A stretch of 64,000 nt of DNA, taken from positions 1 to 64,000 of IMG/VR virus record IMGVR_UViG_3300049048_000052; one strand, given 5' to 3'. Under the pieces are notes generated by a model. It searched no databases and was not told the DNA's origin. It saw only the letters and a list, made by a program, of their open reading frames with translations. Of the stretch, positions 16,633-46,704 are shown piece by piece. Each line of letters starts with the position of its first letter. The stretch's first letter is position 1. The translations under genes and the position numbers were made by a program.

Positions 16633-19600
16633 TTGTTTTCTGAAGAAGAAGAGAAGCGATCTAGTTTAGAGTTATTGATGGGTAGGCTTAGAGGGGAGGA
16701 ATCATCTGATGATGCCCTAAGTCTAGCGGTAAGGCACCACATCTATTATGGAGGTGGTAGTGATAGCTTCATGGCTAGATACAATAGAATGGCGGATGAG
16801 AACCCCTCAGATGAGCCTAGACTCTTTGGAGATCTAAGCACACTTAGCGGTGAATTTGAACTAGATGAGAACTCTCTGAATCAGAGTATAAGAGAAGTAA
16901 CAGCGTACTCTGCATTCTCATCCTTTGATAAGGATATGCAGAATGTATTAGGTAATGGTGCTAATGCTTTAAAGAGATTACATGGTAGGTTCTACTTTGG
17001 TAGTAAGACCCAGGATGCCACCTTTGCATCTAAGAATGTCTACGACACGATATATCGTCCATTCTCTATAGATGCAGATAAAGAAGGATGGACTATAGCC
17101 CCTGAGAGTCCCTTGCATGGTATGCGGGAACATGTCCTCCAAACTATAGTTGATGCTGATGTTAATAGCGGTAGGGGTAACTTCGTTAATATAAGAAGTG
17201 AACTCAATCGTATGGTCCGGGGTAATCTATCTATTAATAAGAAGAACCTGGCACTTATAGATAAAAATACAGACGAAAGAATAGCAGGTATGATAGGTCA
17301 AAAGACCTATGTTAATAGACCCGGCATAGCGCCCTTCTTATCTATGATTCAGGGTGCTGATACTGAGATTGTTATAGATACTTACCAGTTCCAGAATAAA
17401 GCTATATCAGACTATTTATATAACTGGGTAACTAGAAAGGCCTTAGCAGGTGAGACCCCTAGACTGACGATCAGATTAGCTATGCCTAGGGATAAAGGTG
17501 TTGATAGCGCTACTAGCTATGACATTCTTGGACCTAACCTAATACAAATACTCAAGTTCAAACAATTAAAAGAGCAGTTAAATAATGACTTCCCTGATAG
17601 GGATTGGGATGACCTTATTAAGGTAGAGGTTGAGTCTGATGTACACCACTCTAAAATGTACTTCACTGATAGGGCTGCAGCTATAGGCTCCATCAACCTT
17701 ACTAGTCCTGTAGGATATAATCCTAATCAGGCAGGCTCCAACTATGAAATGATGAGAATATTTCATAGTGTAGCCCCTCAAGCTAGTATGGGGGACCTTA
17801 GGTCTGCTCTTACGGATCTTAAGATAAGACATACCTTAGGACTTAATAAGGAACAGTTAAGAGAAGAGTTCCTTTATAGACAGGTAAAAGATCTTAGGGA
17901 GCAAATGGAGAACCGTGTGAGAGGTTCCTCTATGAACTTCACTAATAGGAGAGGCCAACTAGGAATGGGTGGCGACATCTTTGAGCATCTAGAGAAGACA
18001 GTAGAGATGCTGGATGATCCTAGATTTATTGGTAGTAGATTAGGAGACATAATAGCAGGGGGCACTAAGTCTGATAAGTCTAGGGCTCGGTTTGCTAATA
18101 GGTCTGGTAGACTTGAACTCCATATGATACTAGACCAAGTAATGCTATTGCAGCATGCGGATGGTCTATTCAACACTATGGTGGAAGGTGAATTTGGTAG
18201 GTTCTCAGATGATCAGCTATCTAGGATGGATAGTACTGGAGCTAGGAGGGCAAGATATAAGAGGGTACAAAGTAAAGTATTACGTGCCCTTGCTGATAAT
18301 AGAGCGTTTATTGTAGCTGATGCTAGAAATCTAAGAGAGGGTGTTATAGATCCTCTTATGTTTGGTGCCTATGATGAGAGAACTGGTACTAATAGAGGAC
18401 CCCTAATAGCTAGAGAGGTATGGGAGCAGCACGACTATGACATAGCTAAGCTAGCTAGGAAGGCTACAGGATCAAGTGTTGATGAGAGGGTGTTATCCCT
18501 TAGTAACCAGTTCGGATTCTCTAATGAGACTTCACTCCAAGTACTGGCATTGGCTAGTGGAAATATTAGGGCTGCAGGTGTTCCTAGACAGCACGTTAAA
18601 GCTTATAGCCTGATGGCTAGATTGGATGATAGGAAGGGGGCCCCTAATCTAGTAGCACTAAGCTCCTATATGGGTAGCTCCAACTTGGGTCTATATTCAT
18701 CCCCTATGAGGGGTATTGATGACCTAGGCTCCTCTATGGACTCTGATCATCTTAGCCATGAAATTGGTCTAACTATGATGATGGGTCAGGTTAGATCCAT
18801 GATGGACTTCAATACTACTAGTGAGTATGCACTCAGCAGTAGTCAAGAATATGTTGAGATGCAGAGGTACTTCCTACCTAATTGGAGCTTAGCTATGAGT
18901 CAATTAGGGGTGTCAGCTATAGAGAATAAGAACTTCATGGAGGTCCGTAGCAGGAGTCTATGGGAGGGTAACGTTGATAGTAAATCTCTAGTAGGACTGA
19001 GAGATGGCATCCATAATATGATGCGCTCTATGAAGATAGACGAATCTGTATACAGTATAGGTACTGTAACAGATGGATCTAGCCAAAAGGTTATAGGTCT
19101 AGAACTTAGTTTAGATGCTAGGGCCTTAGCTGGCTTTGGTAAAGGCTTTGAAGGTCTACATGGTGAGAGCCGTAGGATAAGTTATAGATTCACTACCCTT
19201 AAAGGGGCGGGTGCTGATCCTATGGTCTATGCAATAGATCAAGGTAAGATTATTGGCAGATCTTTATTTGTTAATAATAGTGATGTAGAACTACCTATTC
19301 TAGATAGGACTATACAAAGTAAGTCCAGTACAGTACTTAACTCTATAGATAATACTTTAGCCTTCATAGCTACCCTAGCTGCGGAGGTAACACATAGAGC
19401 GCTTATAGATAAACCTCGTAAGACATTTGAATCCTTAGATGGCAAGGCGCAGAGAGTAGCCATAGGAGATTACCTAGCTCGTCTTGCGGGTATTAGAGGC
19501 GGTCAATTAGAGGGTCTTTATAATACTGATGTCCTAACTGATGAACATGCTCTCAAGTTAGCGGAGGAGATTAATAAACGTCTGCTCTATGGTAATGAGA

Positions 19601-30826: not shown

Positions 30827-31241
30827 AAGATTAAGTGTCTTATATAAAAGGTTTATACTTATTAGATAATATGGATAGAGGGGTATATGTTGGGCCCTTC
30901 TAGCTTCATATTACTGTAAAAATTATATGGTATTTTTATAGATCGTTATTGAGAGGTTTTCTCTATTGGTATAGCCAATAGGGATATAAGGTTTAGCTCT
31001 TGTTTATCTAGGGTAAGTCTTATGTATACCTGAGCTTCTAAAAAGGGGAATTTTTGTTAGGATTCTCTTAGGTATTATGTGGGGGTAGGTACTCCCCCCT
31101 GGGGGGTCGGCCTGATTCATTTATTAGGATAGAGGAATTCGATGGATTCCTTGTATATCCTGATTAATGATTGGGTCAGCATATGAGTAATGGGTCCTCA
31201 CGGGCCCTTTACTTGTAGTGTAACCCTAGGAGGGTACGAAC

Positions 31242-31661
31242 ATGAAGCGTTACCAAGTGACACAAGCACAACTACTCAACCAAGTCTCCCAAGACCTGGC
31301 TGACTGGTGTTGGCTTGAGCCTGGTGCCGACTACCACCAAGGTGAGATCGTCTGGCTGCCAGACACTCACCCTCTGGTAGGTACTGTGGGTAGCTGTCTC
31401 ACTGAAGTTGCTGACCGGGAGCCTGTCTCCTGTGACAGCTTCAGTGACAAGGTGTTCTACTTCGGCATGACCGGAGTAGCACTGGCAGTGGCTGTGCTTG
31501 GTGGTGTAGTTGTACTACACGGCTTGCTCTCCTCTGTACCTACTAACGTAGGGCAGAGCCTGGGCAAGCGTAGCCACTTCTACGCCTCCTTCGTTGACGG
31601 TCAACCAGCCTGTGAGCTGCTTGATCTCAACGGGGATAATATCCCTGACATCTGCGACTAG
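31242..31661 (+). CDS. Membrane protein with C-terminal DxDGD-type calcium-binding loop
   Basis: Hydrophobic GVALAVAVLGGVVVLHGLL segment; DLNGDNIPDICD terminus. Confidence 0.55.
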   Translation: MKRYQVTQAQLLNQVSQDLADWCWLEPGADYHQGEIVWLPDTHPLVGTVGSCLTEVADREPVSCDSFSDKVFYFGMTGVALAVAVLGGVVVLHGLLSSVPTNVGQSLGKRSHFYASFVDGQPACELLDLNGDNIPDICD

Positions 31662-31721
31662 TAGGTGTCATAAGAAAAGGCCTATATGGCCCTTTTCTTA
31701 TGTTTATAGAGGAATACTCTC

Positions 31722-31877
31722 ATGGCTACTCACATCCGTTTCTGCCTGTACGCATTGGTGATTGTGTATAGTACACCTGTGGCTCTGGTCCGTGTGTACT
31801 ATACACACACCTGCTTGGTACAGGTCCAAGTACAAGAATACATCTGCCAAGAGGTAGATGAAGATATGCCTTATTAA
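31722..31877 (+). CDS. Small hydrophobic protein, 51 aa
   Basis: MATHIRFCLYALVIVYSTPVALVRV... with GAGGA SD, between two modules. Confidence 0.55.
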   Translation: MATHIRFCLYALVIVYSTPVALVRVYYTHTCLVQVQVQEYICQEVDEDMPY

Positions 31878-31946
31878 CCCCTCCTAGGACAAAGGGCTCT
31901 CCACAGGGCCCTTTTCTTGTACCTTTTGTCCTAGGAGGGCAAGAAT

Positions 31947-32162
31947 ATGTTTAAGTTTCCTGGTAAGTCTGATAAGTCTTCTCAGTTCAAAGAGGACATG
32001 GTCAAGGTGACCATGGCTGCCGAATTGGCCAACTTAGAGGGGCAGGCAGGGGAGGATTACCTCTTGTTCTGTACTCCAGAGCCTGAGGTTACCTCCGCTG
32101 ATCACCTGCTTGATGCAGGTGCTCCGCCTGCTAAACCTACCGGGTGGAATCCCATAGTCTAG
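31947..32162 (+). CDS. Hypothetical early protein
   Basis: AGGAGG SD, module-flanked. Confidence 0.65.
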   Translation: MFKFPGKSDKSSQFKEDMVKVTMAAELANLEGQAGEDYLLFCTPEPEVTSADHLLDAGAPPAKPTGWNPIV

Positions 32163-32225
32163 GTTAAGTAACAAAAGGGTCAGCAATGGCCCTTTTGTTA
32201 TCTTTAGTCCTAGGAGGACATCACA

Positions 32226-32504
32226 ATGGGTTACATTATCTCTTTGTTCCTTGGTGCTCTGTTGGGTGGTGGGTCTGCTGCTAGCGTTCTCATCATCCGT
32301 CATCGTGCTTCTATGGAACGTATGGGTCTTATGGTAGCGGATACCCGTGCTCAGCTCCGCGCTGAGATCAAATACCGGGGTCTCCTGGTAGAAGAGTCTC
32401 GACACTATAAGCAGTTGGAATACCTTGTGGATAAGCATCTAAATGATGCTGACTCCACTAAGGAGGACCTACATGATGCTTATCGTGAGCGTCTGGGTCT
32501 CTAA
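32226..32504 (+). CDS. N-terminally anchored coiled-coil protein
   Basis: MGYIISLFLGALLGGG.. hydrophobic start, similar to the start of 33057. Confidence 0.65.
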   Translation: MGYIISLFLGALLGGGSAASVLIIRHRASMERMGLMVADTRAQLRAEIKYRGLLVEESRHYKQLEYLVDKHLNDADSTKEDLHDAYRERLGL

Positions 32505-32654
32505 TTAAACTAAAAGGGCCTTCATTGGCCCTTTCTTTATCTTAAATAGCAACAATAAGGGGCTTGTTCCCTTTGAGCTATTCCCTAGGAACATTAACAC
32601 AAAGATAGGCCTAATGGCCTTTTTCTTAGTTGTTAGTCCTAGGAGGACACAGTT

Positions 32655-32993
32655 ATGCCTACGACCTACCTGACCGTAGCTCGCCTTTGCTCTTGGTATC
32701 ATCTCGCCTACCTCCTTGAGGAGCGGGAACAGATCAAGAGTGAGATTGATACAATCAATGGACTCTATAAGAGTCTACATTGTGTTAATGCCCGTAAGGC
32801 GGGTAAGCGATATCAGAGGGAAGTACACCATACTCTGCGCATTGTGGATCGTAAGATCCGCCGTGAGTTAGAAGAATTGGAGTGCTTCTTACTCCACGGT
32901 CGGCTACCAGCACCGCCACCAAAAGGTGTGAATGTGCTGGGTGCTATGAGATTATATATGGATCAGTGTGTAAGCACCTCCGTTAATCCATAG
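32655..32993 (+). CDS. Hypothetical early protein
   Basis: SD, module-flanked. Confidence 0.65.
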   Translation: MPTTYLTVARLCSWYHLAYLLEEREQIKSEIDTINGLYKSLHCVNARKAGKRYQREVHHTLRIVDRKIRRELEELECFLLHGRLPAPPPKGVNVLGAMRLYMDQCVSTSVNP

Positions 32994-33056
32994 TAGATAA
33001 CAAGAGAGGGCCTTCATCGGCCCTTTTCTTGTTCTATAGCCTAGGAGGCTAAGTAT

Positions 33057-33440
33057 ATGATCGGCTACATCATCTCCGCTCTATTGTCCGCTGGCACGGT
33101 GTTAGGGGTAACCCTAACAGTAATCCAGGCTAAGGATGATAAGATTGAGCAGCTACAAAGCATGCTCAATCATGAGGTAAAGATGAAAACCCTAGCTGAC
33201 CAGTTTGCTGAGGTTTGTCTCGATGGTCGAGATCAGGCCCAGCAATGCTCTGATAAGTACTGGGAAGATCTTCAGAGAGCTAACACTCTCCTGAAGAAGT
33301 ACCAGGAGCTTAACGGTGCTAATGGTCGGTTAGAGTCAGCCCTAAGAGAGCGTATTGCTCTCTTGGAGGAACAGCTAGAAACACTAAAGAGTATTCATGA
33401 ATTGGATACTCTCCATGTGAGAAGGCTGGACCTGAACTAA
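33057..33440 (+). CDS. N-terminally anchored coiled-coil protein
   Basis: MIGYIISALLSAG.. TM segment then heptads. Confidence 0.65.
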   Translation: MIGYIISALLSAGTVLGVTLTVIQAKDDKIEQLQSMLNHEVKMKTLADQFAEVCLDGRDQAQQCSDKYWEDLQRANTLLKKYQELNGANGRLESALRERIALLEEQLETLKSIHELDTLHVRRLDLN

Positions 33441-33541
33441 CACAATAAAAGGATTGTTGAGGTGGATCGCTACAGGCTATTCCACTCTCTACAGGAATAG
33501 GACCTCAATGGTCCTTTTATTGTTCTATTGGAGATACTCCT

Positions 33542-33733
33542 ATGTCTATTATTCACCATCCGCCGACTAACACTTTCTTTCTACATGCAAATGGACAGCT
33601 AACTCCACTAACATATCAGGATCTAATCCTGCTCTGTGTTATGTATGGGGTTAGTTGGATTCGGTTGCTCTCTATATATAAGTTGGCAGATGGATTAACT
33701 AATACTAGGTTGCGGTCCAAATACGGACTGTAA
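33542..33733 (+). CDS. Hypothetical early protein
   Basis: GGAG SD, module-flanked. Confidence 0.55.
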   Translation: MSIIHHPPTNTFFLHANGQLTPLTYQDLILLCVMYGVSWIRLLSIYKLADGLTNTRLRSKYGL

Positions 33734-33786
33734 TCTAGATGAGGGCCTAAGGGCCCTCTTATTAGTTGTTAGTCCTAGGAGGACCT

Positions 33787-34086
33787 ATGCAATATAAGAT
33801 CGCCAACATCGACCTGTTCCGCTCCATGACCTCTTGGATGTGCCTGCAGCATCCTTGGGATGGTGGTGAACTGGTGGAGCTGACTGGAGACGAGTTTGAT
33901 CTACTGGTCTACTCTCTAGATCTCACATGGGGTCTAAAAGAGGAGGATGATACCTTCGCTATCTTCCTGGAGGAGATAGATGAGATGATTGCATCTCAAG
34001 AGAAGTATCGCTCTTGTCCTAAGATGCGTGACCATATCCCAGAGCCTATCGACTGGGATGACCTGGATAGCTTGTTAGACTTCTAG
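33787..34086 (+). CDS. Acidic hypothetical early protein
   Basis: ATG after AGGAGG; ends DWDDLDSLLDF. Confidence 0.65.
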   Translation: MQYKIANIDLFRSMTSWMCLQHPWDGGELVELTGDEFDLLVYSLDLTWGLKEEDDTFAIFLEEIDEMIASQEKYRSCPKMRDHIPEPIDWDDLDSLLDF

Positions 34087-34147
34087 GTAGACTAATAATA
34101 GGGCTAGCAATGGCCCTATTATTAGTTGTTAACCCTAGGAGGGTAGT

Positions 34148-34321
34148 ATGGATTACGTTATGATCTGTGATGCTAACGGCATGGTAGATTCTATCCCGGA
34201 TGATGAGACACTTGATAAGACAGTTGATGCCTTGATCAACCCTCTCGAATGGGGTGAGGAGTCTGCCATTAACCGCAACACCATTGCGGCATACCCTCTA
34301 GTTATCAATACTGCTAACTAG
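34148..34321 (+). CDS. Small acidic protein, 57 aa (MDYVMICDANG...)
   Basis: Below the ORF-track cut-off; AGGAGG SD, module-flanked. Confidence 0.6.
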   Translation: MDYVMICDANGMVDSIPDDETLDKTVDALINPLEWGEESAINRNTIAAYPLVINTAN

Positions 34322-34382
34322 GATAAGACATAAGGAGGGCTTTGGCCCTTTTTATGTTCTATTGTCCTAGGAGGACTTCGAT

Positions 34383-34829
34383 ATGTCTACCAAACTCGCT
34401 AAGCTTTACAATGTACAAGCCAAGCTGATGGAGGAACTCAATGAGCTGCAAGGCTTCTTGGGTTGCTTCCATAGCGTGGCTATGCTGCGTAGGCTAGATG
34501 AGCGTGAGGATCTTCTTATAAGTCTGCTCAGGTTAGTCGAGGATAATATCCAGACTGAACTGAACATATTAGATAATATAGATAACCTTGCGGGTATCGG
34601 TGGCAAGGGCGGTAGGATCCACTTCTACGTTAAAGCAGAGGTGGATACTAACGTTGGTGAGATTGAGTATGATGGAGGATTCTTCGGAGACCTCTCTCAG
34701 GATCGTACTCAGTGGTCCCGCTCTAAGCAGGCTAGGCTTCATGGAGGACACAAGTGCCTCAAGAAGTGGAAGCGCTCAGGGCGCTATGCTCGCCGTATGA
34801 CTAACCGTATTGACAAGTACGCCTGTTAG
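34383..34829 (+). CDS. Hypothetical early protein
   Basis: SD, module-flanked. Confidence 0.65.
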   Translation: MSTKLAKLYNVQAKLMEELNELQGFLGCFHSVAMLRRLDEREDLLISLLRLVEDNIQTELNILDNIDNLAGIGGKGGRIHFYVKAEVDTNVGEIEYDGGFFGDLSQDRTQWSRSKQARLHGGHKCLKKWKRSGRYARRMTNRIDKYAC

Positions 34830-34943
34830 TCAACACTAATAAAAGGGTTGTAGTGATCACCACTACAGACTAAGTCCAATTCACCTCAGGACTAGGGCCA
34901 ACTATGGCCCTTTTATTAGTTTACAGTCTAGGAGAGTACTAGT

Positions 34944-35201
34944 ATGCATTGCGATATCCGGAGCTACCAGCAATTACTTTGGGAGAAATCCTATTGTCAT
35001 CGTAAGGCACTGCTATTTTTAAACCTCTGGCACTTTAGGCGTTATGAGGAGGATAGAATAGCGGCAATGAATTACTGCATAATGTGGGGTGAGACACTTT
35101 CTCATATGCAGGAGAAGGGTATGTTAGTAGAACCAACTGACATTGCGATTGATAGTTATAGTATCGATTGCCTGCTCCAATATTGGAGGGAGGAGCAATA
35201 A
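34944..35201 (+). CDS. Hypothetical early protein
   Basis: Module-flanked. Confidence 0.55.
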   Translation: MHCDIRSYQQLLWEKSYCHRKALLFLNLWHFRRYEEDRIAAMNYCIMWGETLSHMQEKGMLVEPTDIAIDSYSIDCLLQYWREEQ

Positions 35202-35281
35202 CTTAATAAAAGGGCTCTATCAGGGGCCCTTTTATTAAGGAGATAGCCCAATACACTACATTCAATGGGCTCAATCATGCC

Positions 35282-35899
35282 ATGTCTATTTCTACTTCTT
35301 TGACTATCAAAGGTGCAGTTGTCGTGGGTAGCGGTGCCCAAGCAGTAACCTTCCTACATCCTAAGACAGGATACCTAGTTAAGGTAGCTAGACCAATTGA
35401 GTGGATGGAGGATCAAGACATCCTAAGGGAGGCCTTACTACAGCTATTAGCCTCTGTAGATGGTATAGCACCTAAGGTATATACTTGGAACAATGATGCC
35501 TTAGAGATAGAGATGGAGTATGTACCCTATAAGTTCATTGAGACAGTGGACAGCTACCTGGCTAATGATAACTGGGGTGCCGTACGCTCTCTATATTATT
35601 GGGCAGGTGTACAACTAGGTAAACTCCATAAGTTGGGGCTAGTCCACCTAGATAGCCATCCTAAGAACTGGATGGTCAACGAGGAAGGTATGCCTATTCT
35701 CATTGACTATGGGTTTGCCCAGGAGACAGATGATGCAACTCTGAGGGTTGTAGATTACACTACCTGTCTCTATGGGGATACCACCAGAGGTAAAGCCTAT
35801 GTAGGTCTACTAGGTATAGTTAATGATTTGGACCAAGAGGATAAGGATGACCTAGAGCAATGTTTTGCTAAGGGTTACCTCTTAGGTAAGGAGGGTTAA
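35282..35899 (+). CDS. Protein kinase-like (Bud32/RIO-type minimal kinase)
   Basis: VGSGAQA Gly loop, VKV lysine, EMEYV hinge, HLDSHPKN catalytic loop, IDYG. Confidence 0.88.
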   Translation: MSISTSLTIKGAVVVGSGAQAVTFLHPKTGYLVKVARPIEWMEDQDILREALLQLLASVDGIAPKVYTWNNDALEIEMEYVPYKFIETVDSYLANDNWGAVRSLYYWAGVQLGKLHKLGLVHLDSHPKNWMVNEEGMPILIDYGFAQETDDATLRVVDYTTCLYGDTTRGKAYVGLLGIVNDLDQEDKDDLEQCFAKGYLLGKEG

Positions 35900-35988
35900 T
35901 GTAAGGGCCTTTGCATGTTACCGTAGGACACATGCTTAATGCCTGACCCTTTTATAATTAATCGTATATATACGAATGGAATGACCAT

Positions 35989-36168
35989 ATGAAGATAAGC
36001 AGACAGGTGTTGGCCTTCCTTAGGATCATTGAGGATCTAAGAGCTAAGGGTATGCCCAGCGAGACTCTAATCGGATATTGCCAACATAAACTGGATAATG
36101 GTGCCCTAACTGAATTAGAGGTAGCTGAGATAAAAGCAAAGATGAGGATGTTAAAAGTAGAGGCCTAA
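35989..36168 (+). CDS. Small hypothetical protein, 59 aa
   Basis: Open frame MKISRQVLAFLRIIEDLRAKG... ending in the next module hairpin. Confidence 0.45.
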   Translation: MKISRQVLAFLRIIEDLRAKGMPSETLIGYCQHKLDNGALTELEVAEIKAKMRMLKVEA

Positions 36169-36226
36169 GGGCCCTTTTCTTATCCTAGATGCAAACAATC
36201 ATCAGTTCTAGGGTAGGAGATGCACT

Positions 36227-37471
36227 ATGAAGACCCTCAAGCAAGCACTGCTCAATGTACTAAGCAATGGTGTTAGCACTCAACAGTGGCAGGCATTGGA
36301 GGACAGGGGTATGAAAGGTTACCAAGAATTTGACAATATCCAGGCCTTGTCTGATAAGGTATCGATCAAGCAGGTAGCAGACATGGTCAAGTTGATAGCC
36401 CAGTCCATTGCCCTAACTTACCTCGTTGAAGGTAAGGGACGTAACATAGTTATCCTGGGTAGAGATCTATGGCCAGTGTACCCACTCTTAAAGAAGAATC
36501 CTTATTGCAGAAATAAGGTGCAGTACTTCTTATTCTCCAGACTACAATTGGGGGATAAGGGTACTCGGGAGCAATGGCTTAAAGAGGTGCCCCCAAACTC
36601 CATTGTGATTGATACAGGGTATGCTGGCAGCATATTCAAGGCTATCAAAGAGTTTGATCCCACTATTGAAGGATGGCTTGTATCTAGTAGGTCCTCTGAG
36701 TTCAAACAAATTAATCTCTTCAAGGCTACGTTGGGTCACCAAGAGATAGTAGAGATTATTGAGAGGGCACCTAAGATCATTGGCCGCTGTGTGGCTATAG
36801 ATCAGGATGGTAAGGCTCGTTGTCCTCAGGATACTAGAGACAACGATGAAAATGGACAATTCTCTGTTAGAGAGGCAGCCCTATGGAATAGAGGGTTAAT
36901 GCTTCACTTAGGACTTGATGCTCGTTGGGGTACATTCAGTGGTATTGTGCCTGAGGATCGGGTGCCTAATAAGTTACATAGCCACTACCTTAAGGTTAGA
37001 TATCTAAGATCTAAGCTTACAGACGTTAATACTAGCCGGGCTCCATTCAGAGCTAAGCTAGATAAGAAATGGCTTGAGCAGTTCATCAGAGCATACCTTG
37101 TACCCTTAGGTATTAAGGACTGTAAGCTAGATGACAAAGCCCAAGCCTCCGTGGGTTATTACAGCTTCGTTGGTAATAATGGAGATGTATTCGACCTAGA
37201 CCTTTGCCCGATAGTAGGTTCCTGGCGACTAATGAAAGGGGGCCATACCACTATATTGAGGTGGAATGAGTTCGATGGTCTAGTGGTGAGGACTCGCCGC
37301 TTTGAAAGTAAGGGGTTCGCCAAAGCATGTGAAATGTTTGGATCCTTAGCTCAGTACACAAAGGAGCTCTACTATAATCCTGACTCCGCAGATGTATACG
37401 ATGATTATGGTCCATATGATGACACCTATGATTATAGTGAGGACTCGGGTGGTGGTAATCTAGAGTTCTAA
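36227..37471 (+). CDS. PRTase-like fold protein
   Basis: ILGRDLWP and IVIDTGYAGSI motifs resemble PRPP-binding-loop proteins. Confidence 0.45.
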   Translation: MKTLKQALLNVLSNGVSTQQWQALEDRGMKGYQEFDNIQALSDKVSIKQVADMVKLIAQSIALTYLVEGKGRNIVILGRDLWPVYPLLKKNPYCRNKVQYFLFSRLQLGDKGTREQWLKEVPPNSIVIDTGYAGSIFKAIKEFDPTIEGWLVSSRSSEFKQINLFKATLGHQEIVEIIERAPKIIGRCVAIDQDGKARCPQDTRDNDENGQFSVREAALWNRGLMLHLGLDARWGTFSGIVPEDRVPNKLHSHYLKVRYLRSKLTDVNTSRAPFRAKLDKKWLEQFIRAYLVPLGIKDCKLDDKAQASVGYYSFVGNNGDVFDLDLCPIVGSWRLMKGGHTTILRWNEFDGLVVRTRRFESKGFAKACEMFGSLAQYTKELYYNPDSADVYDDYGPYDDTYDYSEDSGGGNLEF

Positions 37472-37551
37472 GATGTGGTTAAGAGGGCCCAGTCGGGCCC
37501 TTTTCTTATCCTAGGTAATAATCTATCTGTCCTAGGTTAGGAGATACACTC

Positions 37552-38001
37552 ATGTCCGTATACTATATCATCAACCAAGACAACTCTATCGTTCTGTCTG
37601 TAGGCGACGATGCTCGTTGCGGTGCAATCTACGACCAACAACAAGCAGAAGAGATTGCTGAAGGTTGCTATGATTGGGAAGTTATCTCTTTCCCTGCCTC
37701 ACCTATTCAGGTAACAGAACGGAAGTGGAAGGTTAATATTGTCCTACAGTTTGTAGGCGGTACTGACCGCAAAGAGTTCTTTGTGATGGGTACTTCTGCT
37801 CTAACTGTAGCCGAGCAGTTCAAAACTATTATCTTGAGCCGCTACCATGATTACATCTGGGCTGAGCAAGCACGTACTGCTAAGCCCTACCTTATTGGGG
37901 ATACACATGCACATTTCGAATTGGATTCCAATCGTAAGACCATTACAGTCAATGAGTATAGGGAGCCAGAGTTTAAGTCTGTGCGTGATATCAACTTCTA
38001 G
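37552..38001 (+). CDS. Hypothetical early protein
   Basis: GGAGATACACT leader. Confidence 0.65.
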   Translation: MSVYYIINQDNSIVLSVGDDARCGAIYDQQQAEEIAEGCYDWEVISFPASPIQVTERKWKVNIVLQFVGGTDRKEFFVMGTSALTVAEQFKTIILSRYHDYIWAEQARTAKPYLIGDTHAHFELDSNRKTITVNEYREPEFKSVRDINF

Positions 38002-38083
38002 ATTTGAATGAGTAGATGAGGGCCAGATATCTGGCCCTTTTCTTGTCCTAACACTTACTTTACCTAGGACAAGGAGATACACT

Positions 38084-39277
38084 ATGTCTATTTGTCAGTC
38101 TTGCGTATTCTACTTCAATCAAGACAACCATGGAGTGAAAACAATGTTATGTTCAGGTGGTTTGACTCTAGGAGTAGACAGTTGCTCTGGCTACGATGAG
38201 GGGGAGCCTAATATTCAGGACTCTTACCTTAACAAAGAAGTGATGGCTACTCTCGTGAACCCTGAGCCATCTATCCCAATAAGAGTAGTATCGATATCTG
38301 AGTCTCAAGCTTATGAGCGCCTGCTCTTTAGTTATAATGAGAATGGTTATGAGTGGACACCTATAGATGTCTACAATAACCGCATCGTCATTATTACCAA
38401 CTGTGGTGCCTATGCATGGTACTACCGTAGAGGGGTGGATAATGTATGGACCTTCCAGAGTTATGATGGAGGGGACACATTTGATGCCGTAGGTGATACA
38501 CCTCTACTAGCCTATCTCAGATATGACGGCTTCTGGGACTTTGAGCATGTCAGCTTAGAAAGAGAAACCAATGCCATTGCTATCAGCAGTGAGTTTGCTA
38601 TTGTAGGGTCTCCAGTAGGTTATTTCATTGGGCACCTAGTATTACAAGAGAACCTTACGACCCGTATCTGGGGTCTCATGCCTAAGTGCTTCAGGACTGA
38701 AGATGATGCGTATCGATATCTCCTGGATGACGCGAACAATATTACTGTCAGCAAGATCGAACTGGGCAACTCCTGTGACTCAGACCTGGGTCACTGGGTT
38801 AGAGATCTCCAGTCAATGGAAGATATGGATGATGTAACCATATATCCTATGGGTGATCTATTGGTCGTAGCCAAATGCTTTGCGCCTGATATGGACTGGC
38901 ATGTCATGACTAAGGCCTTTCAGATCGTGTGGAGTATCTCTAACTTCTTCGAGGAGGGATACTACCTCAGCCTGGAGGAGGTAGTGACCATGTACAAACA
39001 AGAGTCCCTACTTATACCTTGTCCATCTGTAGATTGTCCAGAGTATATGAAGGAGTTAGGGACTCTGTTCCCTAACCTTGAGTTTACATTCGAGGATGTA
39101 ACTGGGGATGGTCAGATCTATGCTACTTACAGCACAGATGAGACTATATTCTCTATTACTTCTCATGAACCAGGGATGTACTATGCCAGATTACATACTC
39201 CTGACGGTAATGAGGATCTTGAGAGTGATAGTCTGACAACTATTGCTGAGCACTACCTTGCTTACTTTCTGAGTTAG
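38084..39277 (+). CDS. Acidic hypothetical protein with N-terminal Cys cluster
   Basis: MSICQSCVFY..C..C; GGAGATACACT leader. Confidence 0.65.
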   Translation: MSICQSCVFYFNQDNHGVKTMLCSGGLTLGVDSCSGYDEGEPNIQDSYLNKEVMATLVNPEPSIPIRVVSISESQAYERLLFSYNENGYEWTPIDVYNNRIVIITNCGAYAWYYRRGVDNVWTFQSYDGGDTFDAVGDTPLLAYLRYDGFWDFEHVSLERETNAIAISSEFAIVGSPVGYFIGHLVLQENLTTRIWGLMPKCFRTEDDAYRYLLDDANNITVSKIELGNSCDSDLGHWVRDLQSMEDMDDVTIYPMGDLLVVAKCFAPDMDWHVMTKAFQIVWSISNFFEEGYYLSLEEVVTMYKQESLLIPCPSVDCPEYMKELGTLFPNLEFTFEDVTGDGQIYATYSTDETIFSITSHEPGMYYARLHTPDGNEDLESDSLTTIAEHYLAYFLS

Positions 39278-39570
39278 CAAGGTGTCCTTAGTTAATCCCT
39301 GAGAACACAGGGCTAATGCCAACAGGGGGCCTTCGGGCCCTCTTATTATGTAATGAATATATACTTGCCCTTCTATTGAGTCATGGGGCTAATGGGGAGA
39401 TACATTCTCCCCTTCTTATTCTTATCTAAGTTATATATCTGTCCTTTGACTAGGGACATTATAGGGAGCACAACTCCCTTCCTTATTTTAATTGTTGTAT
39501 CTCCGTACGGCTCATAGGGCCCTTTTATTATCCTAGGCACTATTTCTAATCCTAGGTTAGGAGATACACT

Positions 39571-40122
39571 ATGTCTAACTGCATCAACTGTGTTCATTTC
39601 ATTGAGCGGGCTACTTCAACTGGTAATGTCTTAAGGATGTGTAGGGTTAATGCCACCTTACATGATATTAACTGCACTAAAAAGGTTACAGGACCAGTGA
39701 AACCCATAAAGGGCCCAAGTCAGAAAGCGCTAGCAGCTACTGTATTGGAGTCTCTTCTGGGTTGGAAGGGAAGTAGCCTAGCTGCCAATCCTGCATCTAC
39801 GGACTCTAAAGTTAAAAGTAGTAGTGAGGCTAGAGTCCTGGCTAAGAAGCAGTACTATGCTAGTAAGGCTATGACTTTTAATACCTTTGATAGTCTAGGC
39901 ACCTTTACCAAACTTCTAAAACCTATCTTCCGAAGTCTAGGTGGTGATTGGCAATGTGGCTGCAGCAAGGATGGTACTGGCTACTACGCTAGGGCTGGTA
40001 ATATAATCATCTCCTATACTATAGCTAGTTATCAACCATGGCTCTACCTAGTGGAGGGGAGCGGTATCGCTGAGTCTTTTGAGACTTTTATACAACTCAA
40101 GCAGCGTGTATTGGGTTACTAG
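39571..40122 (+). CDS. Hypothetical protein with N-terminal Cys cluster
   Basis: MSNCINCVHF..C..C, same pattern as 38084. Confidence 0.65.
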   Translation: MSNCINCVHFIERATSTGNVLRMCRVNATLHDINCTKKVTGPVKPIKGPSQKALAATVLESLLGWKGSSLAANPASTDSKVKSSSEARVLAKKQYYASKAMTFNTFDSLGTFTKLLKPIFRSLGGDWQCGCSKDGTGYYARAGNIIISYTIASYQPWLYLVEGSGIAESFETFIQLKQRVLGY

Positions 40123-40246
40123 TCCCTAAGTTGTAAGTGGGGCCCGAGAAGGCCCCACTTACAACTACTGTATCTCCTGGCCCATTGGCCCTTTTATTAT
40201 CCTAGGTAACACTTTACCTATCCTAGGTTAATGGAGATACACTATC

Positions 40247-40966
40247 ATGGCTAACAACTCTACCTCTTCCTCTATCGTTCGCGCATTCTCTGCTAAGTTG
40301 AACATCTGCCAACGTCGTGCTACGGGTGCTAAGGGCGGTAACCTGGGTACTGTTACCAAGGGCTACATCCGTACCTCTCCTGTTTCCACCTGGATTCAAT
40401 GGTCTCCTATGGAGGGCAACCTGTTCCTGGGTGAGCAAGAGGTAACCCCTCAGCAACTGCATGAACTGTTCCGTTTCCCTAATGGGGTACAGCTGATTTT
40501 CAAGCTTGATCTGAAGAATGTGACGCTCATGCAGGACGGGGCTGTTATCATGCCGCTTGGTTCTGATATTGAGGACCAGAAGGCCAATATGATTGATATG
40601 TTGGATGATACTAGCGTGCAGTCTATTACTGTGCGTTGGACATCTAAGCTTATCTTCAGCCGTAAGCAAGAGGCTTACATCGGGAGTGCTGGTGATCTCC
40701 GCTTGCCTCAGGTAGTTTACATTGAGCAGGCTACTATTGAGCTCAACTCTGAACGTGTAGAGATTGGAGGGGATGCTGTAGAGCATGTGGAACTCATTGA
40801 AGCTATCGCTGCCCTGCAATCTAAGAAGCCTACTCGTAAGGGTTTGGCACGTGTGCAGGAGCGTATGGTGAACATGGATCCAGGAGTTATTACTCCCTCT
40901 AACGTGAGCAGCTTTGCTGAAGGCATGCCTTCCGAATCCCCAGAGGACATCATGAATATGATGTAA
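40247..40966 (+). CDS. Hypothetical protein, paralogue A upstream of RNAP
   Basis: AKLNICQR..G.KGG..WIQW shared with 41030; ends EDIMNMM. Confidence 0.75.
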   Translation: MANNSTSSSIVRAFSAKLNICQRRATGAKGGNLGTVTKGYIRTSPVSTWIQWSPMEGNLFLGEQEVTPQQLHELFRFPNGVQLIFKLDLKNVTLMQDGAVIMPLGSDIEDQKANMIDMLDDTSVQSITVRWTSKLIFSRKQEAYIGSAGDLRLPQVVYIEQATIELNSERVEIGGDAVEHVELIEAIAALQSKKPTRKGLARVQERMVNMDPGVITPSNVSSFAEGMPSESPEDIMNMM

Positions 40967-41029
40967 TCCTTACTTAATAAAAGGGCCATATGGCCCTTTT
41001 ATTGTCCCGTACCTAGTTATTCAACGGGA

Positions 41030-41743
41030 TTGGAGATTCAAATGTACATTGCAACACTCAATATCTGTCAGCGTGGTAAATGGGGATTGAAGGGCGGCAA
41101 GCGTGCCGTCATCACTAATGGTGCCATTATGCGTGGTGAGCCTCGTTGGTGGATTCAGTTCATTCCCACTGATGGCTTCATCTATAAGGATGAGTATCTA
41201 ATCAGTCCTGTAACTGATTGGATGCATACGCTATTAGCTGATGATGAGCTGAGTCTTATGTTCCGGGTTGGTGCCGATAGCGCTGACTTTATTACCCCTG
41301 ATGGTAAGAAGCATATGCTATATAGTCGTGAGGACCAAGAGAACTTCATGCTTGAGGTTCTTGAGGATCCTAGCATCACGGCGATGCGTATCGAGTGGAA
41401 CTGTAAGCTGTTGTTCAATAGCAATACAGACATTACCACTAATGGTCATGAATCCATGGTGGCCGAGATCTGTGAGGCTACTGTATATCTTCTTGAGGCC
41501 ACTCGCTTTGAGAATGATAAGACTGAGGTAGCACCTGAGGAACTGGATGATGCGACTAAGCCATTCTTAGTTCCTAAGGGTGAATCCAAGGGTCTGTCTG
41601 GGGTACAGAATAATCTCAGTCGTGCTAAGCGTAAACGCGCCGAGAGAAAAGAGAGACACCGGGCAGTTAAGGCTGGTACGGTACTGGACGATGATATTGC
41701 TAGTGTAGCTGAGGCTGCAGAGAGCATCATCGATATGATGTAA
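41030..41743 (+). CDS. Hypothetical protein, paralogue B upstream of RNAP
   Basis: ATLNICQR..GLKGG..WIQF; ends ESIIDMM. Confidence 0.75.
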   Translation: MEIQMYIATLNICQRGKWGLKGGKRAVITNGAIMRGEPRWWIQFIPTDGFIYKDEYLISPVTDWMHTLLADDELSLMFRVGADSADFITPDGKKHMLYSREDQENFMLEVLEDPSITAMRIEWNCKLLFNSNTDITTNGHESMVAEICEATVYLLEATRFENDKTEVAPEELDDATKPFLVPKGESKGLSGVQNNLSRAKRKRAERKERHRAVKAGTVLDDDIASVAEAAESIIDMM

Positions 41744-41818
41744 TACCTATATACAAAATAGGACAATAAGGGGGCCATCGGCCCTTTTATTGTACACTCC
41801 CTTTATTGGAGAACCACT

Positions 41819-44800
41819 ATGTCTGCTATTGACTTCTCTCGTTTGACCGTGCCCGCTACTGCTAGCCAGGAACAGATCAGTGACCTGATCGATTGTCTGG
41901 GTGAGTTAGGTTACCAGGTGGTACCTGGACCTGACTTTAGAGTGGATGCGTCTGATGTCTTTATGCCCTTTAAGGGTGTGGAGACGGATGACGTAGCCTT
42001 GCTGGCTTACGCTCTAAGTACAGTGCTCAGCGGTCTCGGTATTGGTCTGCCTGAAACGGCAGCTGATGAATACGAGGCTGCCGCTGATGTTGATGGCCTG
42101 GTCCAGTATGTCCGGGCTATGTTCGATAACCCTAGTCAAGAGGAAACAATGGAAGAAGTCATTGAAGTTCAGGATCCAACTCCCTCCGTTAAGGTTGTTG
42201 GTTCTACTAAGGAAAACTTGCTCCCTCCAATTGTGTGGGAGAATCGCCCCATCGCTGAGATGAATGATATCATCTGTCGCTCTATGGGCACCAACTGGGA
42301 TAAACCTCTACCTTCTTGGGTACGCCTTGCTACTGCCTTTACGCATATTGGCCGTACTATTCTACCTACTGAATGGTTAGAAGGGGGCCGTATCGACCGC
42401 AGTCATAACTATGTCCGTACTGATGGCCGTTCCATTCTGAAGGCTATGTACAAGTTGGGTGTACCTCTCGTTGGTACCTCTACCAAGGTTAAGTTCTCTG
42501 AAGGTCAACCCATTGAGACTGTGGAACCCTGCCGTTTCAATGTTACCTTCACCACTCGGGATAACACCTACTTCGTTATCCCTGAGATTGAATCTGTTGT
42601 GGATGAAATGCCTCCACTCTTTGATGCAGAGCGTATGTCTCATGGCATGGTTAATTATGTCCATGAGGTAGTAAGTGCACTGGATGATGAGACCCTCCTG
42701 CAATTCTGGGCTAAGTTCATTCCTAACTCTAGTCTCAATGGTCGTGAGCTCACCTTCAGCCCTAGCGGTGTCTCTCAATACACCAATGTAATTGTTCGCT
42801 TGCCTGAGGCTGAGGACGAGCTGATTAGTGTTAGTACTGGTCGCACTCGCTATGTCAATCCTGTAATGGATGTTAGTGGTATTGTTGTATCTGGCCGCAC
42901 CATCCTGACCATGATGCTCATGAGTCTCGTAAATGAGGCCGAGTATTTGATTACTCAATCACGTGTAGATGGATACCTGAACCTGCTCTCTAATATGTGG
43001 GTACCCGCTGAGAATTATGGGGCCTTCAAGAAGAGTGGTGAGGCCATCCATAAAATCTACAACAATAGGGAGCTCCCAGTGGGCATGTATTGCACTCTGG
43101 GTATCCGTTATCCCTTCATTCACTTAGTGAATGTTAGTGCTGCCGCTAATAACGGTATCACTTCCTCTCGTCATATGGTAGAGGAATTCATCAAGAAGGG
43201 TATTGCTGCACTGCCTCACAAATATGGCACCTTTGGCAAGGCTGTCGTATTTGGTGCAGGGGTAAACGCCATGGGTATGGCGATCGCCCGTAATGAATAT
43301 GGCAACTATGTTGTCAATAACCTGGAGACTGATGAAGCATGGCAGCGCATGATCATGCGTACTGTCCTGGATGCATCTAAGCCTTCCAAGTTCTTCAACC
43401 GTCCCTGGACGTTCTTTGGTTCTGTCTTTGCTGATGGTACTGAGGACTTCCCGCTTGAGAAGTCTAAGCTCCATATGATGACCTATCATCCTGTGGATAA
43501 GGAAGGTACCGAGTTTATCAATGAGGCGGTCTATGTTCGCGGTGTGCGTCGTAAGATCTGTTATACCAATAGCCTCCTGACTCATGGCTCTGGTGTTGCT
43601 TCTGTTAACCCCAGCCGCCAAGCCATCCGTTATTCCGTTGGTAAGTCTGAGGCTGATATGATTAATGATTACAGCATCCCTCCTACATTCCGTAAGGTAT
43701 TTGAGAAGGATGCTGAGACTCGTAATGGGGCAGGTATGAACTCTGACTGGCTGCAGATTGTAGCTGAGAAGCTTCAAGAGAAGGCTGATCGTATTGTCGA
43801 TGAGGCCAAGGCCACCGGTAAGGTATTTCATGATGGGGATGTCGTAATGACTCTCTTTGCTGATCTGCCTGATTATAAGCGTGATCTGGTTGTGGTTACT
43901 GCACCTAACCAGGATATCTATCTGGAACGTGCTGAAGTAGTACGTGTGGCAACTACTAATGCTGTACGTGTGCGCTTCTTTACTCGCTTTGAGGGTGAGG
44001 ATTATATCCTTAAGCTGCGGGGTCCCGGTGTTAAGTTCACTACTCAGTTGGATGATATCACTTTCCTGAGTGGTTTCAGTGATTGGGATCTGTTCCTCAA
44101 CATGGAGTGCACTAAGGGCGAACTCGCTCAACTGTACATGTATGCTGAGGCCGTCGGTGAATGTATCTACTATCCTGATACCGGTTTATTGGAGCATGTT
44201 GCTACTGGTAAGGTAGAAGATTTGAAGGATGTTGGCGCTCCTTTCTACAAGTGGGTTGCAGACAATACCGCTAAGGAGGTTATTGAGCGTAAGGTATCCA
44301 AGGAGTACTTGGAATACATTGCCGAATGCCATCCTGGTCTGGTTGCCTTTACTGAGGACGATGTTACCAATAAGTCTGATATTGTTGTCAAGGCTGATCT
44401 GGGTCATGACTATCTTGTCCATGAGACCATCCAATGTCTTGTGGGTGATATGCTCTTCATGGTGGAGATCTCCACTCCTCGTGAGAATACTAGCCCTGCT
44501 GGTCTTACTCTGGAGCAGCTTGCCCTACTCGAGGGTGTCTATGCTGACTTGGCACTGGCATTCATTCACCTGTCTAAGGAGTTCCACTCCGGTATCCAAG
44601 GTATGGCTAAGCTGATCTTGGGTAAGTTGCCCTCTCAGGATCAAGTACCCTACCTTAACCTCATTGAGGCTGGGGATGTAGTAAACCGCGTCTCCCGGAC
44701 CGATAAGGGTATCCTCATGGGACGTCGCCTGATGCAGGCGCTTAAGAAGGAGTTTCCTAAGGGCTTTGTGCTCTTCAGCACTGACAGCTTTGGAGTCTAC

Positions 44801-46660: not shown

Positions 46661-46704
46661 TCTGATCTAGTAAGGGGGCCTACGGGCCCTTTTACTAGTG
46701 TTTG

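What the first reader, a model, noticed from the sequence alone, without database searches (positions are those of the whole stretch)
31192..41800. Early genes arranged as one-gene cassettes separated by a conserved GGGCC/GGCCC hairpin module
Seen: nearly every gene is bracketed by an A-run-GGGCC-N4-9-GGCCC-T-run hairpin with conserved stem sequence and covarying outer arms. Ordinary terminators do not need stem sequence identity. Established: PeSL cassettes of T4-type phages drive modular shuffling, and N4 vRNAP uses hairpin promoters. Inference: a combined terminator plus vRNAP promoter, processing site, or recombination handle.
Basis: partly seen in the sequence, partly recalled or inferred. 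Interest (0 to 1): 0.75.

Follow-up and report, generated by a model that had tools for sequence, protein, structure and literature searches.

The report
Hairpin-punctuated gene cassettes in jumbo phage
About twenty small phage genes are each separated by the same hairpin-plus-T-run signal, best read as a transcription stop fused to a conserved restart/leader element; the virus, a 252-kb relative of Microcystis cyanophages, also encodes at least one previously unrecognised RNA polymerase.

Summary
20 of the 21 gaps between + strand ORFs from 31.2 to 46.7 kb hold an oriented GC-clamp hairpin followed by a conserved T-tract, and a second small hairpin lies at the ribosome site.

The genome is not N4-like. 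It is a 252-kb myovirus distantly related to Microcystis phage Ma-LMM01.

Where a gap is long, the module splits. A strong hairpin of free sequence stays at the upstream stop codon. A weak hairpin that keeps GGCCC + TTTTNTTA stays 28-48 nt before the next start.

The same 5' element stands before unrelated genes in at least two other related phage lineages, and a third has similar modules. One gene-cassette indel between two relatives has its junction at the hairpin.

My best reading is a PeSL-like composite: a terminator or 3'-end hairpin fused to a sequence-specific restart/leader signal. No sigma-70 promoter is present.

The 1613-aa gene that closes the array is a two-barrel RNA polymerase, shown by a confident model, fold matches and catalytic motifs. 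The 3717-aa protein keeps an NLGDFDGD site in all homologues.

A phage-RNAP promoter role for the 5' element is therefore plausible but unproven, because no RNA data exist.

The parts
31186..31241 (+). Gap 0: hairpin 31186-31214 (dG -15.0), then class A leader with SD hairpin 31223-31235. There is no + strand ORF upstream.
31669..31721 (+). Gap 1: 12-bp A/T-extended hairpin (dG -17.3) and a T-rich leader without CCTAGG.
31888..31946 (+). Gap 2: hairpin (dG -14.8), then class A leader with SD hairpin 31928-31940.
32169..32225 (+). Gap 3: 11-bp palindromic hairpin (dG -19.1), then SD hairpin 32207-32219.
32510..32654 (+). Gap 4, split module. The strong hairpin 32510-32538 sits at the stop codon. 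The weak hairpin 32603-32626 (dG -8.9) is followed by a class A leader with SD hairpin 32636-32648.
33000..33056 (+). Gap 5: hairpin (dG -17.5), then SD hairpin 33038-33050 with stem variant AGCCT/AGGCT.
33445..33541 (+). Gap 6: long hairpin whose arms enclose about 50 nt of non-coding insert (dG -28.6). The inner stem is GGACC/GGTCC.
33738..33786 (+). Gap 7: hairpin (dG -14.4), then SD hairpin 33772-33784. The ATG at 33787 is the likely start.
34091..34147 (+). Gap 8: 14-bp perfect palindrome (dG -22.5), then SD hairpin 34132-34144 with stem variant ACCCT/AGGGT.
34330..34382 (+). Gap 9: hairpin (dG -12.7), then SD hairpin 34364-34376.
34835..34943 (+). Gap 10: outer A/T arms enclose a non-coding insert plus an inner GGGCC hairpin (dG -33.0).
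35202..35281 (+). Gap 11: 14-bp palindrome (dG -23.0) before the kinase-like ORF 35282-35899.
35900..35988 (+). Gap 12: atypical weak structure (z -1.4). The T-tract here runs into TATAAT.
36158..36226 (+). Gap 13, class B. A weak 4-bp hairpin lies over the stop codon. Then come the T-tract and a leader hairpin with boxes 36184-36189 and 36207-36212, which carry a compensatory change. The SD follows.
37480..37551 (+). Gap 14, class B: hairpin (dG -17.4), T-tract, CCTAGG boxes at 37510 and 37531, then SD.
38015..38083 (+). Gap 15, class B variant: hairpin (dG -18.8), then a leader stem 38045-38050 with 38065-38070 in a shifted register with compensating bases.
39322..39570 (+). Gap 16, split module. 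Three hairpins of free sequence lie at 39322, 39390 and 39460. A weak hairpin at 39505-39530 keeps the GGCCC T-tract and is followed by a class B leader (boxes at 39532 and 39551).
40129..40246 (+). Gap 17, split module. A 16-bp hairpin without T-tract (dG -29.8) is followed by the weak hairpin 40175-40198 and a class B leader (boxes at 40201 and 40222).
40972..41041 (+). Gap 18: palindromic hairpin (dG -18.4), then a leader hairpin with class B architecture but a different stem (41005-41010 with 41024-41029), then SD.
41762..41818 (+). Gap 19: hairpin (dG -20.2), then a leader in which CTCC pairs with the SD GGAG. It lies before the RNAP-like gene.
41819..46660 (+). Last gene of the array: a 1613-aa two-barrel RNA polymerase homologue. 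The Mg-site motif NEGDGDGDP is at nt 45335-45349.
46667..46698 (+). Last hairpin of the series (dG -21.8), after the RNAP-like gene. The same kind of hairpin follows the homologous gene in L001 and in Ma-LMM01.
16633..27786 (+). 3717-aa ORF (context). The conserved RSPP...NLGDFDGDP site is at nt 24469-24483 (about aa 2613). It is a candidate virion RNAP on motif evidence only.

Best explanation
Each intergenic module is a composite of two signals.

(1) A 3'-end element for the upstream gene. It is a GC-clamped hairpin followed at once by a U/T-tract, which is the anatomy of a factor-independent terminator. In the first half of the array an A-tract extends the stem and makes the hairpin symmetric.

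(2) A 5' element for the downstream gene. It consists of the sequence GGCCC + TTTTNTTA, a short leader hairpin, and a strong Shine-Dalgarno site. In class A the leader is a 5-bp stem with the SD in and next to an AGG loop. In class B two CCTAGG boxes pair over a 13-24-nt loop.

In tight gaps the two elements share one hairpin. In long gaps they separate.

The module makes each small accessory gene a self-contained unit: transcription or RNA ends at the hairpin, and expression of the next gene restarts from the 5' element. The most likely restart is a promoter for a phage-encoded two-barrel RNA polymerase. Less likely is an RNA processing site.

Because 40-nt stretches are repeated at 86-90% identity, the modules also act as linkers for homologous recombination that adds, deletes and shuffles cassettes, as PeSLs do in T4-type phages.

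Shown: the anatomy, orientation, non-randomness, covariation, conservation in relatives, and the RNAP nature of the 1613-aa protein.

Inferred: termination, restart, which polymerase acts, early timing, and recombination.
For: Terminator anatomy and placement after stop codons: (35 terminator-like sites against 11.6 expected).

Strand bias.

The T-tract motif gives 30 matches against 1.85 expected.

Split modules. Stop-proximal hairpins are strong and free in sequence. Start-proximal ones are weak (dG -5 to -9) but keep GGCCC and the T-tract at a fixed distance from the start. This holds in the window and in L001, L006 and L008.

The first module (31186) has no + strand gene upstream to terminate.

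An invariant 19-nt block is shared by 14 class B modules from three or more phages whose proteins are 30-53% identical. These modules stand before at least 8 unrelated gene families. A further relative, L154, has similar modules.

Leader hairpins covary:
- Class A pair 4-16 is AU in 5 and GC in 5, paired in 10 of 10. The covariation score is 0.269 against 0.179 for shuffles, reached by 13 of 500.
- The class B boxes pair 6 of 6 in all 14 copies, with two compensatory changes.
- The same architecture occurs with a different stem at 41005/41024.

There is no sigma-70 promoter signal: 22 sites against 28.7 expected. No sigma or cellular-type RNAP domains are found in the genome.

The 1613-aa protein is a two-barrel RNAP:
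- AF2 pLDDT 89.5 and pTM 0.89.
- 49 of the top 50 Foldseek PDB hits are RNAPs, including P23-45 gp96.
- Z 13.3 to RDR2 and Z 10.4 to gp96.
- The K..R..G.K, R.P and NEGDxDGD motifs are conserved.

The giant protein keeps RSPP...NLGDFDGD in all five homologues.

Precedent: in Thermus phage P23-45 a giant virion RNAP transcribes pre-early genes, including the gene for a second RNAP. That system has conserved promoter motifs and conserved motifs at terminators (PMC10770324).

Recombination:
- Repeat families of 41-44 nt at 86-90% identity.
- The L006/L008 cassette indel has its junction at the hairpin.
- Mosaic proteins.
Against: No RNA data exist for this phage. Only DNA metagenome runs hold it, so no 5' or 3' end is mapped.

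Class A gaps leave only about 33 nt between hairpin and ATG, and no fixed -10-like element is visible there.

The T-tract consensus could be explained by termination alone. GGCCC conservation could in part reflect common descent of the copies.

The pairing of the T-tract with the SD region in class B is not above the composition control: 7.2 of 9 against 6.3 +/- 1.0.

The RNAP identity of the giant protein is motif-level only. The model had pLDDT 41, and hhalign gave 20.7% probability, E 0.0011, over 30 columns.

Only one clean indel supports recombination, and it lies between genomes that are already diverged.

In crAss-like phage phi14:2, early transcripts made by the virion RNAP showed no common upstream motif.
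Confidence: 0.5

Rival explanations
1. The elements are plain intrinsic terminators or attenuators in one or a few long operons driven from upstream of 31.2 kb. Downstream genes are expressed by partial read-through or antitermination. The shared sequence is only the trace of recent duplication and gene conversion, and the leader hairpins merely tune translation.
For: The anatomy is canonical hairpin plus T-tract, placed right after stop codons. No recognisable promoter lies in the gaps. Class A gaps are too short for a sigma-70 promoter plus leader. Modules share up to 90% identity over 41 nt.
Against: About 20 serial terminators would extinguish expression of the distal genes, including the RNAP gene, unless they are very leaky. 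Weak start-proximal copies keep GGCCC and the T-tract although a strong hairpin already lies upstream. The block is invariant across phages with 30-53% protein identity. The first module has no gene to terminate.
Confidence: 0.2
2. The modules are RNA punctuation rather than transcription signals. A long early transcript is cut by a host or phage endoribonuclease in the single-stranded U-rich linker between the two hairpins. This yields monocistronic mRNAs protected by a 3' hairpin and a 5' hairpin, as T7 early RNAs are made by RNase III and as plastid mRNAs carry 3' inverted repeats.
For: Two adjacent hairpins flank an invariant U-rich linker. The leader hairpins covary, so they act as single strands. 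Some hairpins lack a T-tract, such as 40129. SD-in-hairpin leaders recur in L001 and L154.
Against: A U-tract directly abutting a GC stem is the hallmark of termination and is not needed for stability hairpins. Stems are mostly 5-14 bp, too short for RNase III. No nuclease was identified. There are no RNA data.
Confidence: 0.15
3. The hairpins are N4-type DNA hairpin promoters, extruded on supercoiled DNA and read by a T7-like virion RNAP.
For: The stems are short and GC-rich. Class A SD hairpins have a 5-bp stem and 3-nt loop. A giant protein with a polymerase-like motif exists.
Against: The phage is a myovirus of the Ma-LMM01 kind. It has no PF00940 domain and no tblastn similarity to N4-like phages over residues 457-3717. 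The motif in the giant protein is of the two-barrel class, not the T7 class. Terminator-hairpin loops vary from 3 to 10 nt without conserved bases. There are more than 20 copies rather than a few operon promoters.
Confidence: 0.03
4. The hairpins are sites for a site-specific recombinase, like integron attC sites between promoterless cassettes.
For: The region is an array of single-gene cassettes separated by imperfect palindromes. One indel has its junction at a hairpin.
Against: No tyrosine recombinase domain is present in the genome. The oriented T-tracts and the SD leaders are transcription and translation features. There is no attC-like core.
Confidence: 0.02

Closest known systems
PeSL (promoter-early stem-loop) cassettes of T4-type phages (PMC2839356, PMC4122927)
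   Same: The order of parts is the same: stem-loop, AT-rich stretch, start signal, SD, ATG. The elements are repeated between ORFans in a plastic region. The stem consensus of the nt-1 group, A3-4 G3-loop-C3 T3-4, is nearly the one seen here. Indels between relatives lie at the elements.
   Different: No sigma-70 -35/-10 promoter is present. Its place is taken by GGCCC + T-tract plus covarying leader hairpins. The phage is not T4-type. It appears to have its own RNA polymerase(s). Mini-circles were not tested.
Pre-early transcription unit of Thermus phage P23-45 (PMC10770324)
   Same: Both have a giant protein with DFDGD, a second two-barrel RNAP encoded in the first-expressed block, a strongly conserved motif at each pre-early gene, and terminators that share a sequence motif.
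   Different: The P23-45 giant protein is the tape measure of a siphovirus, with its polymerase at the N-terminus. Here the motif lies at about aa 2613 of a myovirus protein of unknown role. The motifs are unrelated in sequence. Nothing here is tested biochemically.
Bidirectional intrinsic terminators of bacteria and phages (established knowledge)
   Same: GC stem, U-tract, complementary A-tract, and placement after stop codons.
   Different: There is near-identity of the 3' arm and T-tract over more than 20 copies and across phages. Weak copies are retained at a fixed distance from the next start.
N4 virion-RNAP hairpin promoters (established knowledge)
   Same: Short DNA hairpins next to early genes in a phage with a giant protein.
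   Different: The polymerase class differs, the loops are variable, and the copy number and placement differ. See the membership test.
Start-associated sequences (SAS/ESAS) of cluster K mycobacteriophages (my own knowledge, not checked here)
   Same: A conserved motif lies just upstream of many start codons, partly with inverted repeats at variable spacing.
   Different: Those are not fused to terminator hairpins, and the sequences are unrelated.

Membership tests
Intrinsic (factor-independent) terminator | GC-rich stem of 5-14 bp with a 3-10-nt loop | tested here: met
   23 of 26 have dG of -8.6 or stronger; three are 4-bp stems.
Intrinsic (factor-independent) terminator | U/T-tract directly 3' of the stem, co-oriented with the gene | tested here: met
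   Consensus TTTTMTTRK. The motif gives 30 matches against 1.85 expected. Strand bias is 21 to 4. Hairpin 40129 lacks the tract.
Intrinsic (factor-independent) terminator | RNA 3' ends at the tract | not testable with these tools
   No RNA runs hold this phage.
PeSL cassette | Repeated stem-loop modules between ORFans in a plastic region | tested here: met
PeSL cassette | Strong sigma-70-like -35/N17/-10 promoter between stem-loop and SD | tested here: not met
   22 sites against 28.7 expected, with none positioned between a hairpin and the following start. TATCCT in class B lacks a -35 partner and is absent from class A.
PeSL cassette | Gene gain, loss or replacement junctions at the elements in relatives | tested here: inconclusive
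   One clean case is the L008 cassette 773-1213, absent from L006, with the junction at the hairpin. The window and L001 differ by a 202-aa gene. The genomes are too diverged and too few.
PeSL cassette | Excised mini-circles | not testable with these tools
   Only assembler contigs of two DNA runs are available, and they show no joints.
N4-type hairpin promoter | T7-like virion RNAP | tested here: not met
   No PF00940 domain, although the control genomes do not ring either. tblastn of residues 457-3717 of the giant protein hits only Microcystis/Microcoleus phages.
N4-type hairpin promoter | 5-7-bp stem, 3-nt loop with conserved bases, a few copies ahead of operons | tested here: not met
   Loops are 3-10 nt and variable, with more than 20 copies.
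Two-barrel RNA polymerase (1613-aa ORF) | Two double-psi beta-barrels with the K-rich and DxDGD motifs, and fold similarity to known members | tested here: met
   Sequence profiles alone find no PDB or Pfam match.
Two-barrel RNA polymerase (3717-aa ORF) | The same features | tested here: inconclusive
   RSPP...NLGDFDGD is invariant in 5 homologues. The model is unusable, pLDDT 41. hhalign against the other family gave E 0.0011 and probability 20.7%.
Integron attC array | Tyrosine recombinase and an attC core | tested here: not met
   No PF00589 domain in the genome.
T7-type RNase III processing sites | Stems of about 20 bp with an internal loop | tested here: not met
   The longest perfect stem is 16 bp; most are 5-14 bp.

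The most novel reading that the evidence does not exclude
The Ma-LMM01-like phages, including the cultured Microcystis phage that was described as relying wholly on host sigma-70 RNAP, carry two single-chain two-barrel RNA polymerases: a giant, probably virion-delivered one and a 1.6-kaa one. The GGCCC/T-tract hairpin module is a bifunctional stop-and-start signal read by these enzymes. Each host-takeover gene would then be a portable, self-contained cassette, and the ATTGATTG motif found elsewhere in the genome would be the promoter of the second enzyme.
Probability: 0.3. Interest if true: 0.8.

Novelty: new variant of a known kind. Interest (0 to 1): 0.6.

Why it matters
If the reading holds, it extends the PeSL principle beyond T4-type phages. 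In that principle, regulatory linkers double as recombination handles for ORFan shuffling. Here it would operate with a non-sigma-70 start signal.

The reading also bears on how Ma-LMM01-type cyanophages run three temporal gene classes without visibly changing host transcription (PMC5780444). That question becomes testable, because this lineage encodes at least one, probably two, unrecognised RNA polymerases whose candidate signals are now defined.

The 122 metagenomic clusters related to the 1613-aa enzyme show that this polymerase family is widespread and unannotated.

Tried and rejected
Searches for close relatives that found nothing:
- Megablast of the region against 50,697 phage records: no match.
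- Exact module patterns in IMG/VR: no match.
- The 1613-aa protein in IMG/VR: no match.

Looser IMG/VR patterns returned only chance or unrelated hits.

Rfam found no family for the modules or for the inserts.

Read laying: the second soil run holds only identical 151-nt unitigs, so it shows no variants or joints.

The sigma-70 scan shows no enrichment. I then looked by eye for a fixed -10 element.
- TATCCT is present in 13 of 14 class B copies. It overlaps the T-tract end and box 1, and it has no counterpart in class A.
- I therefore make no promoter claim from it.

U-tract/SD pairing as a selected anti-SD lock is not above the composition control.

No Pfam, NCBIfam or PDB sequence hit was found for either giant protein. 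The ESM Atlas gave only weak PLD-like leads below the useful score.

AF2 of the giant protein with a 3-sequence alignment failed. Full-length hhalign gave nothing.

The Ma-LMM01 early region (gp054-063) does not have the cassette layout. Only the hairpin after gp064 is shared.

An integron-like reading is rejected because there is no recombinase.

Full report
**Context**

The window is the first 64 kb of a single 251,780-bp viral contig with 42.5% GC. IMG/VR classes it as linear and CheckV as complete. It was assembled from a soil metagenome and is present at low depth in a second one. No RNA run holds it.

It is not N4-like.
- PHROGs finds a tail sheath, a major head protein and a portal.
- The only relatives in 50,697 phage records are Microcystis phages of the Ma-LMM01 group and a Microcoleus phage, at about 25-31% identity.

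**The observation**

The exact GGGCC-N3-9-GGCCC pattern occurs 13 times against 0.37 expected, ten of them in 32.5-41.8 kb. In the whole genome, 19 of 42 + strand terminator-like hairpins fall in 30-42 kb.

I tabulated 26 hairpins.
- 20 of 21 gaps between the ORFs at 31242...46660 hold a typical one.
- 18 of the 25 with an ORF upstream begin within 13 nt of its stop codon.
- The start-proximal hairpin of every gap ends 18-48 nt before the next start.

Sequence counts confirm the identity of stem and T-tract.
- GGCCCTTT occurs 21 times in 252 kb, 16 of them here. Its complement occurs 4 times.
- The 3' arm plus T-tract motif gives 30 matches against 1.85 expected.

Several copies are perfect 11-16-bp palindromes whose A/T arms differ from copy to copy. 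The series runs on to 46698.

Each gap also holds a conserved leader.
- Class A (31.2-34.4 kb) has a T-rich 16-18-nt spacer and then a 5-bp stem with an AGG loop that embeds the Shine-Dalgarno site. Its two outer pairs covary: AU 5 and GC 5, never unpaired. The score is 0.269 against 0.179 for shuffles and at most 0.15 for slid controls.
- Class B (36.2-40.2 kb) has TTTTMTTAT and then two CCTAGG boxes 19-21 nt apart that pair with each other. Two compensatory changes support the pairing.
- The leader at 40997-41037 has the same architecture with an unrelated stem.

The boxes are therefore arms of a single-strand structure, not protein sites in their own right.

**Relatives**

The only close homologue of the 1613-aa protein (49% identity) lies on a Logan contig, L001. 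Upstream of three of its genes stands the class B module.

A metagenome scan with the 19 specified bases shared by the window and L001 found four virome contigs with six more modules. In the alignment of the 14 modules, the 3' arm, T-tract and first box are invariant or nearly so. The 5' arm varies and is sometimes reduced to 3 bp.

The modules precede at least eight unrelated gene families, and one window protein is a mosaic of domains that are separate genes elsewhere. A third relative, L154 (giant protein 41% identical, GC 37%), also has such modules.

L008 carries a cassette of leader, gene and hairpin that L006 lacks, and the junction is at the hairpin.

**Split modules**

Where a gap is long, there are two kinds of hairpin.
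- A strong hairpin of free sequence stays at the stop codon (32510, 39322, 40129, and in L001, L006, L008).
- A weak one (dG -5 to -9) keeps GGCCC and the T-tract at a fixed distance from the next start.

The first module, at 31186, has no + strand gene upstream. So the hairpin region holds two functions: a structure-dependent 3' element and a sequence-dependent 5' element.

**Which polymerase?**

Sigma-70-type sites are not enriched, at 22 against 28.7 expected. The genome has no Pfam-detectable sigma factor, cellular-type RNAP subunit or T7-type RNAP.

A search for the DxDGD signature found it in both giant ORFs, and it is conserved in all homologues, including Ma-LMM01 gp064 and gp080.

For the 1613-aa protein the evidence is strong.
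- A family of 122 metagenomic clusters exists.
- The K..R..G.K, R.P and NEGDxDGD motifs are conserved.
- The model is confident, with pLDDT 89.5.
- Its PDB matches are almost only two-barrel RNAPs, including the virion RNAP of phage P23-45.

For the 3717-aa protein the evidence stays at motif level.

The P23-45 system is the closest precedent for the whole layout (PMC10770324). The published view that Ma-LMM01 uses host sigma-70 polymerase for all gene classes rests on BPROM predictions (PMC5780444).

**Interpretation**

The anatomy matches PeSL cassettes (PMC2839356, PMC4122927) in everything except the promoter. The promoter's place is taken by a conserved non-sigma-70 element.

I therefore read the module as a terminator or 3'-end hairpin fused to a restart/leader signal. 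I rate a phage-RNAP promoter as the most likely kind of restart. I give the composite reading 0.5 overall. The sub-claim of a phage-RNAP promoter corresponds to the novel case, which I rate at 0.3. Recombination between modules would be the source of cassette turnover.

The rivals that remain open until RNA ends are mapped are terminator-only and RNA processing. The N4-type and integron-type readings fail their defining features.

'Early' timing is inferred from three things: gene content (ORFans), a kinase-like ORF weakly similar to the Ma-LMM01 early protein gp061, and the position of the RNAP gene.

Noticed in passing
window 41819-46660; L001 4450-10119; Ma-LMM01 gp064: The 1613-aa protein is a single-chain two-barrel RNA polymerase with 122 related metagenomic clusters. 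Its Ma-LMM01 homologue is annotated as hypothetical, and that phage has been described as lacking its own polymerase.
   Followed up: yes
window 16633-27786 (motif at 24469-24483): The 3717-aa protein keeps FRSPP, then about 50 aa, then SPIS..T.N.GDFDGDPYT in all homologues found (P0125, P0126, Ma-LMM01 gp080). It is a candidate virion RNAP. The structure prediction failed for lack of homologues.
   Followed up: partly
genome 48-203 kb, e.g. window 48321, 51023, 51603, 54576, 57735: A second upstream motif, (T)ATTGATT(G), occurs at 43 intergenic + strand sites. It lies mostly 9-39 nt before start codons and often after a terminator hairpin. It may be a promoter of another class.
   Followed up: partly
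window 46710-46880; L001 10180-10350; Ma-LMM01 43271-43551: Directly after the RNAP-like gene lies an array of about four repeats of the form GCAGCGAAAG, 11-14 nt, GAAGGAGCGG. L001 shares it, and it matches in position the 42-bp repeats of Ma-LMM01. Its function is unknown.
   Followed up: no
L001 1830-1960; L006 710-800; L008 1245-1335: A conserved non-coding insert of about 130 nt lies between a strong hairpin and the class B leader. It is flanked by direct copies of the GGCCC T-tract. An internal stem covaries (CTCCGC/GCGGAG, CTGCGC/GCGCAG, CCCTGC/GCAGGG). It may be a small RNA cassette. It is absent from the window genome and has no Rfam match.
   Followed up: partly
window 33445-33523 and 34835-34920: Two hairpins whose A/T arms enclose 50-60 nt of extra non-coding sequence with their own small stems. 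They look like insertions into a module or emptied cassettes.
   Followed up: no
window 50858-50929, 50941-51009, 51519-51592: ARAGORN calls a tRNA with anticodon CTA, which would read the amber codon, and two tRNA-like genes with odd anticodon loops. About half of the cassette genes (9 of 20) end in TAG.
   Followed up: no
window 38084-39277, 39571-40122; L003, L007, L008: A Cys-rich N-terminal domain (CxxC...C) and other pieces of the 397-aa protein occur as separate genes or in other combinations in relatives. This is domain-level shuffling.
   Followed up: partly
window 35282-35899 and 36227-37471: The first is a small Bud32/RIO-like protein kinase ORF, weakly similar to Ma-LMM01 early gp061. 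The second is a 414-aa ORF with a sub-threshold Spx/ArsC-like stretch.
   Followed up: partly
whole genome: Several palindromic hexamers are absent or nearly so: CCCGGG 0 (9.5 expected), GCCGGC 0 (6.7), CTCGAG 1 (8.3). This suggests avoidance of restriction sites. CCTAGG and GGGCCC are not avoided.
   Followed up: no
L056, L057, L125 (IMG/VR contigs, GC about 55%): Unrelated phage contigs repeatedly use the same GTCCT-AGG-AGGAC hairpin at their ribosome sites. The SD-in-hairpin design therefore recurs outside this lineage.
   Followed up: no
L003 1-151 and the ends of L003, L007, L008: The first 151 nt of L003 are a bacterial 23S rRNA fragment, and the contig ends carry an amplification primer. 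These virome contigs are partly chimeric.
   Followed up: no
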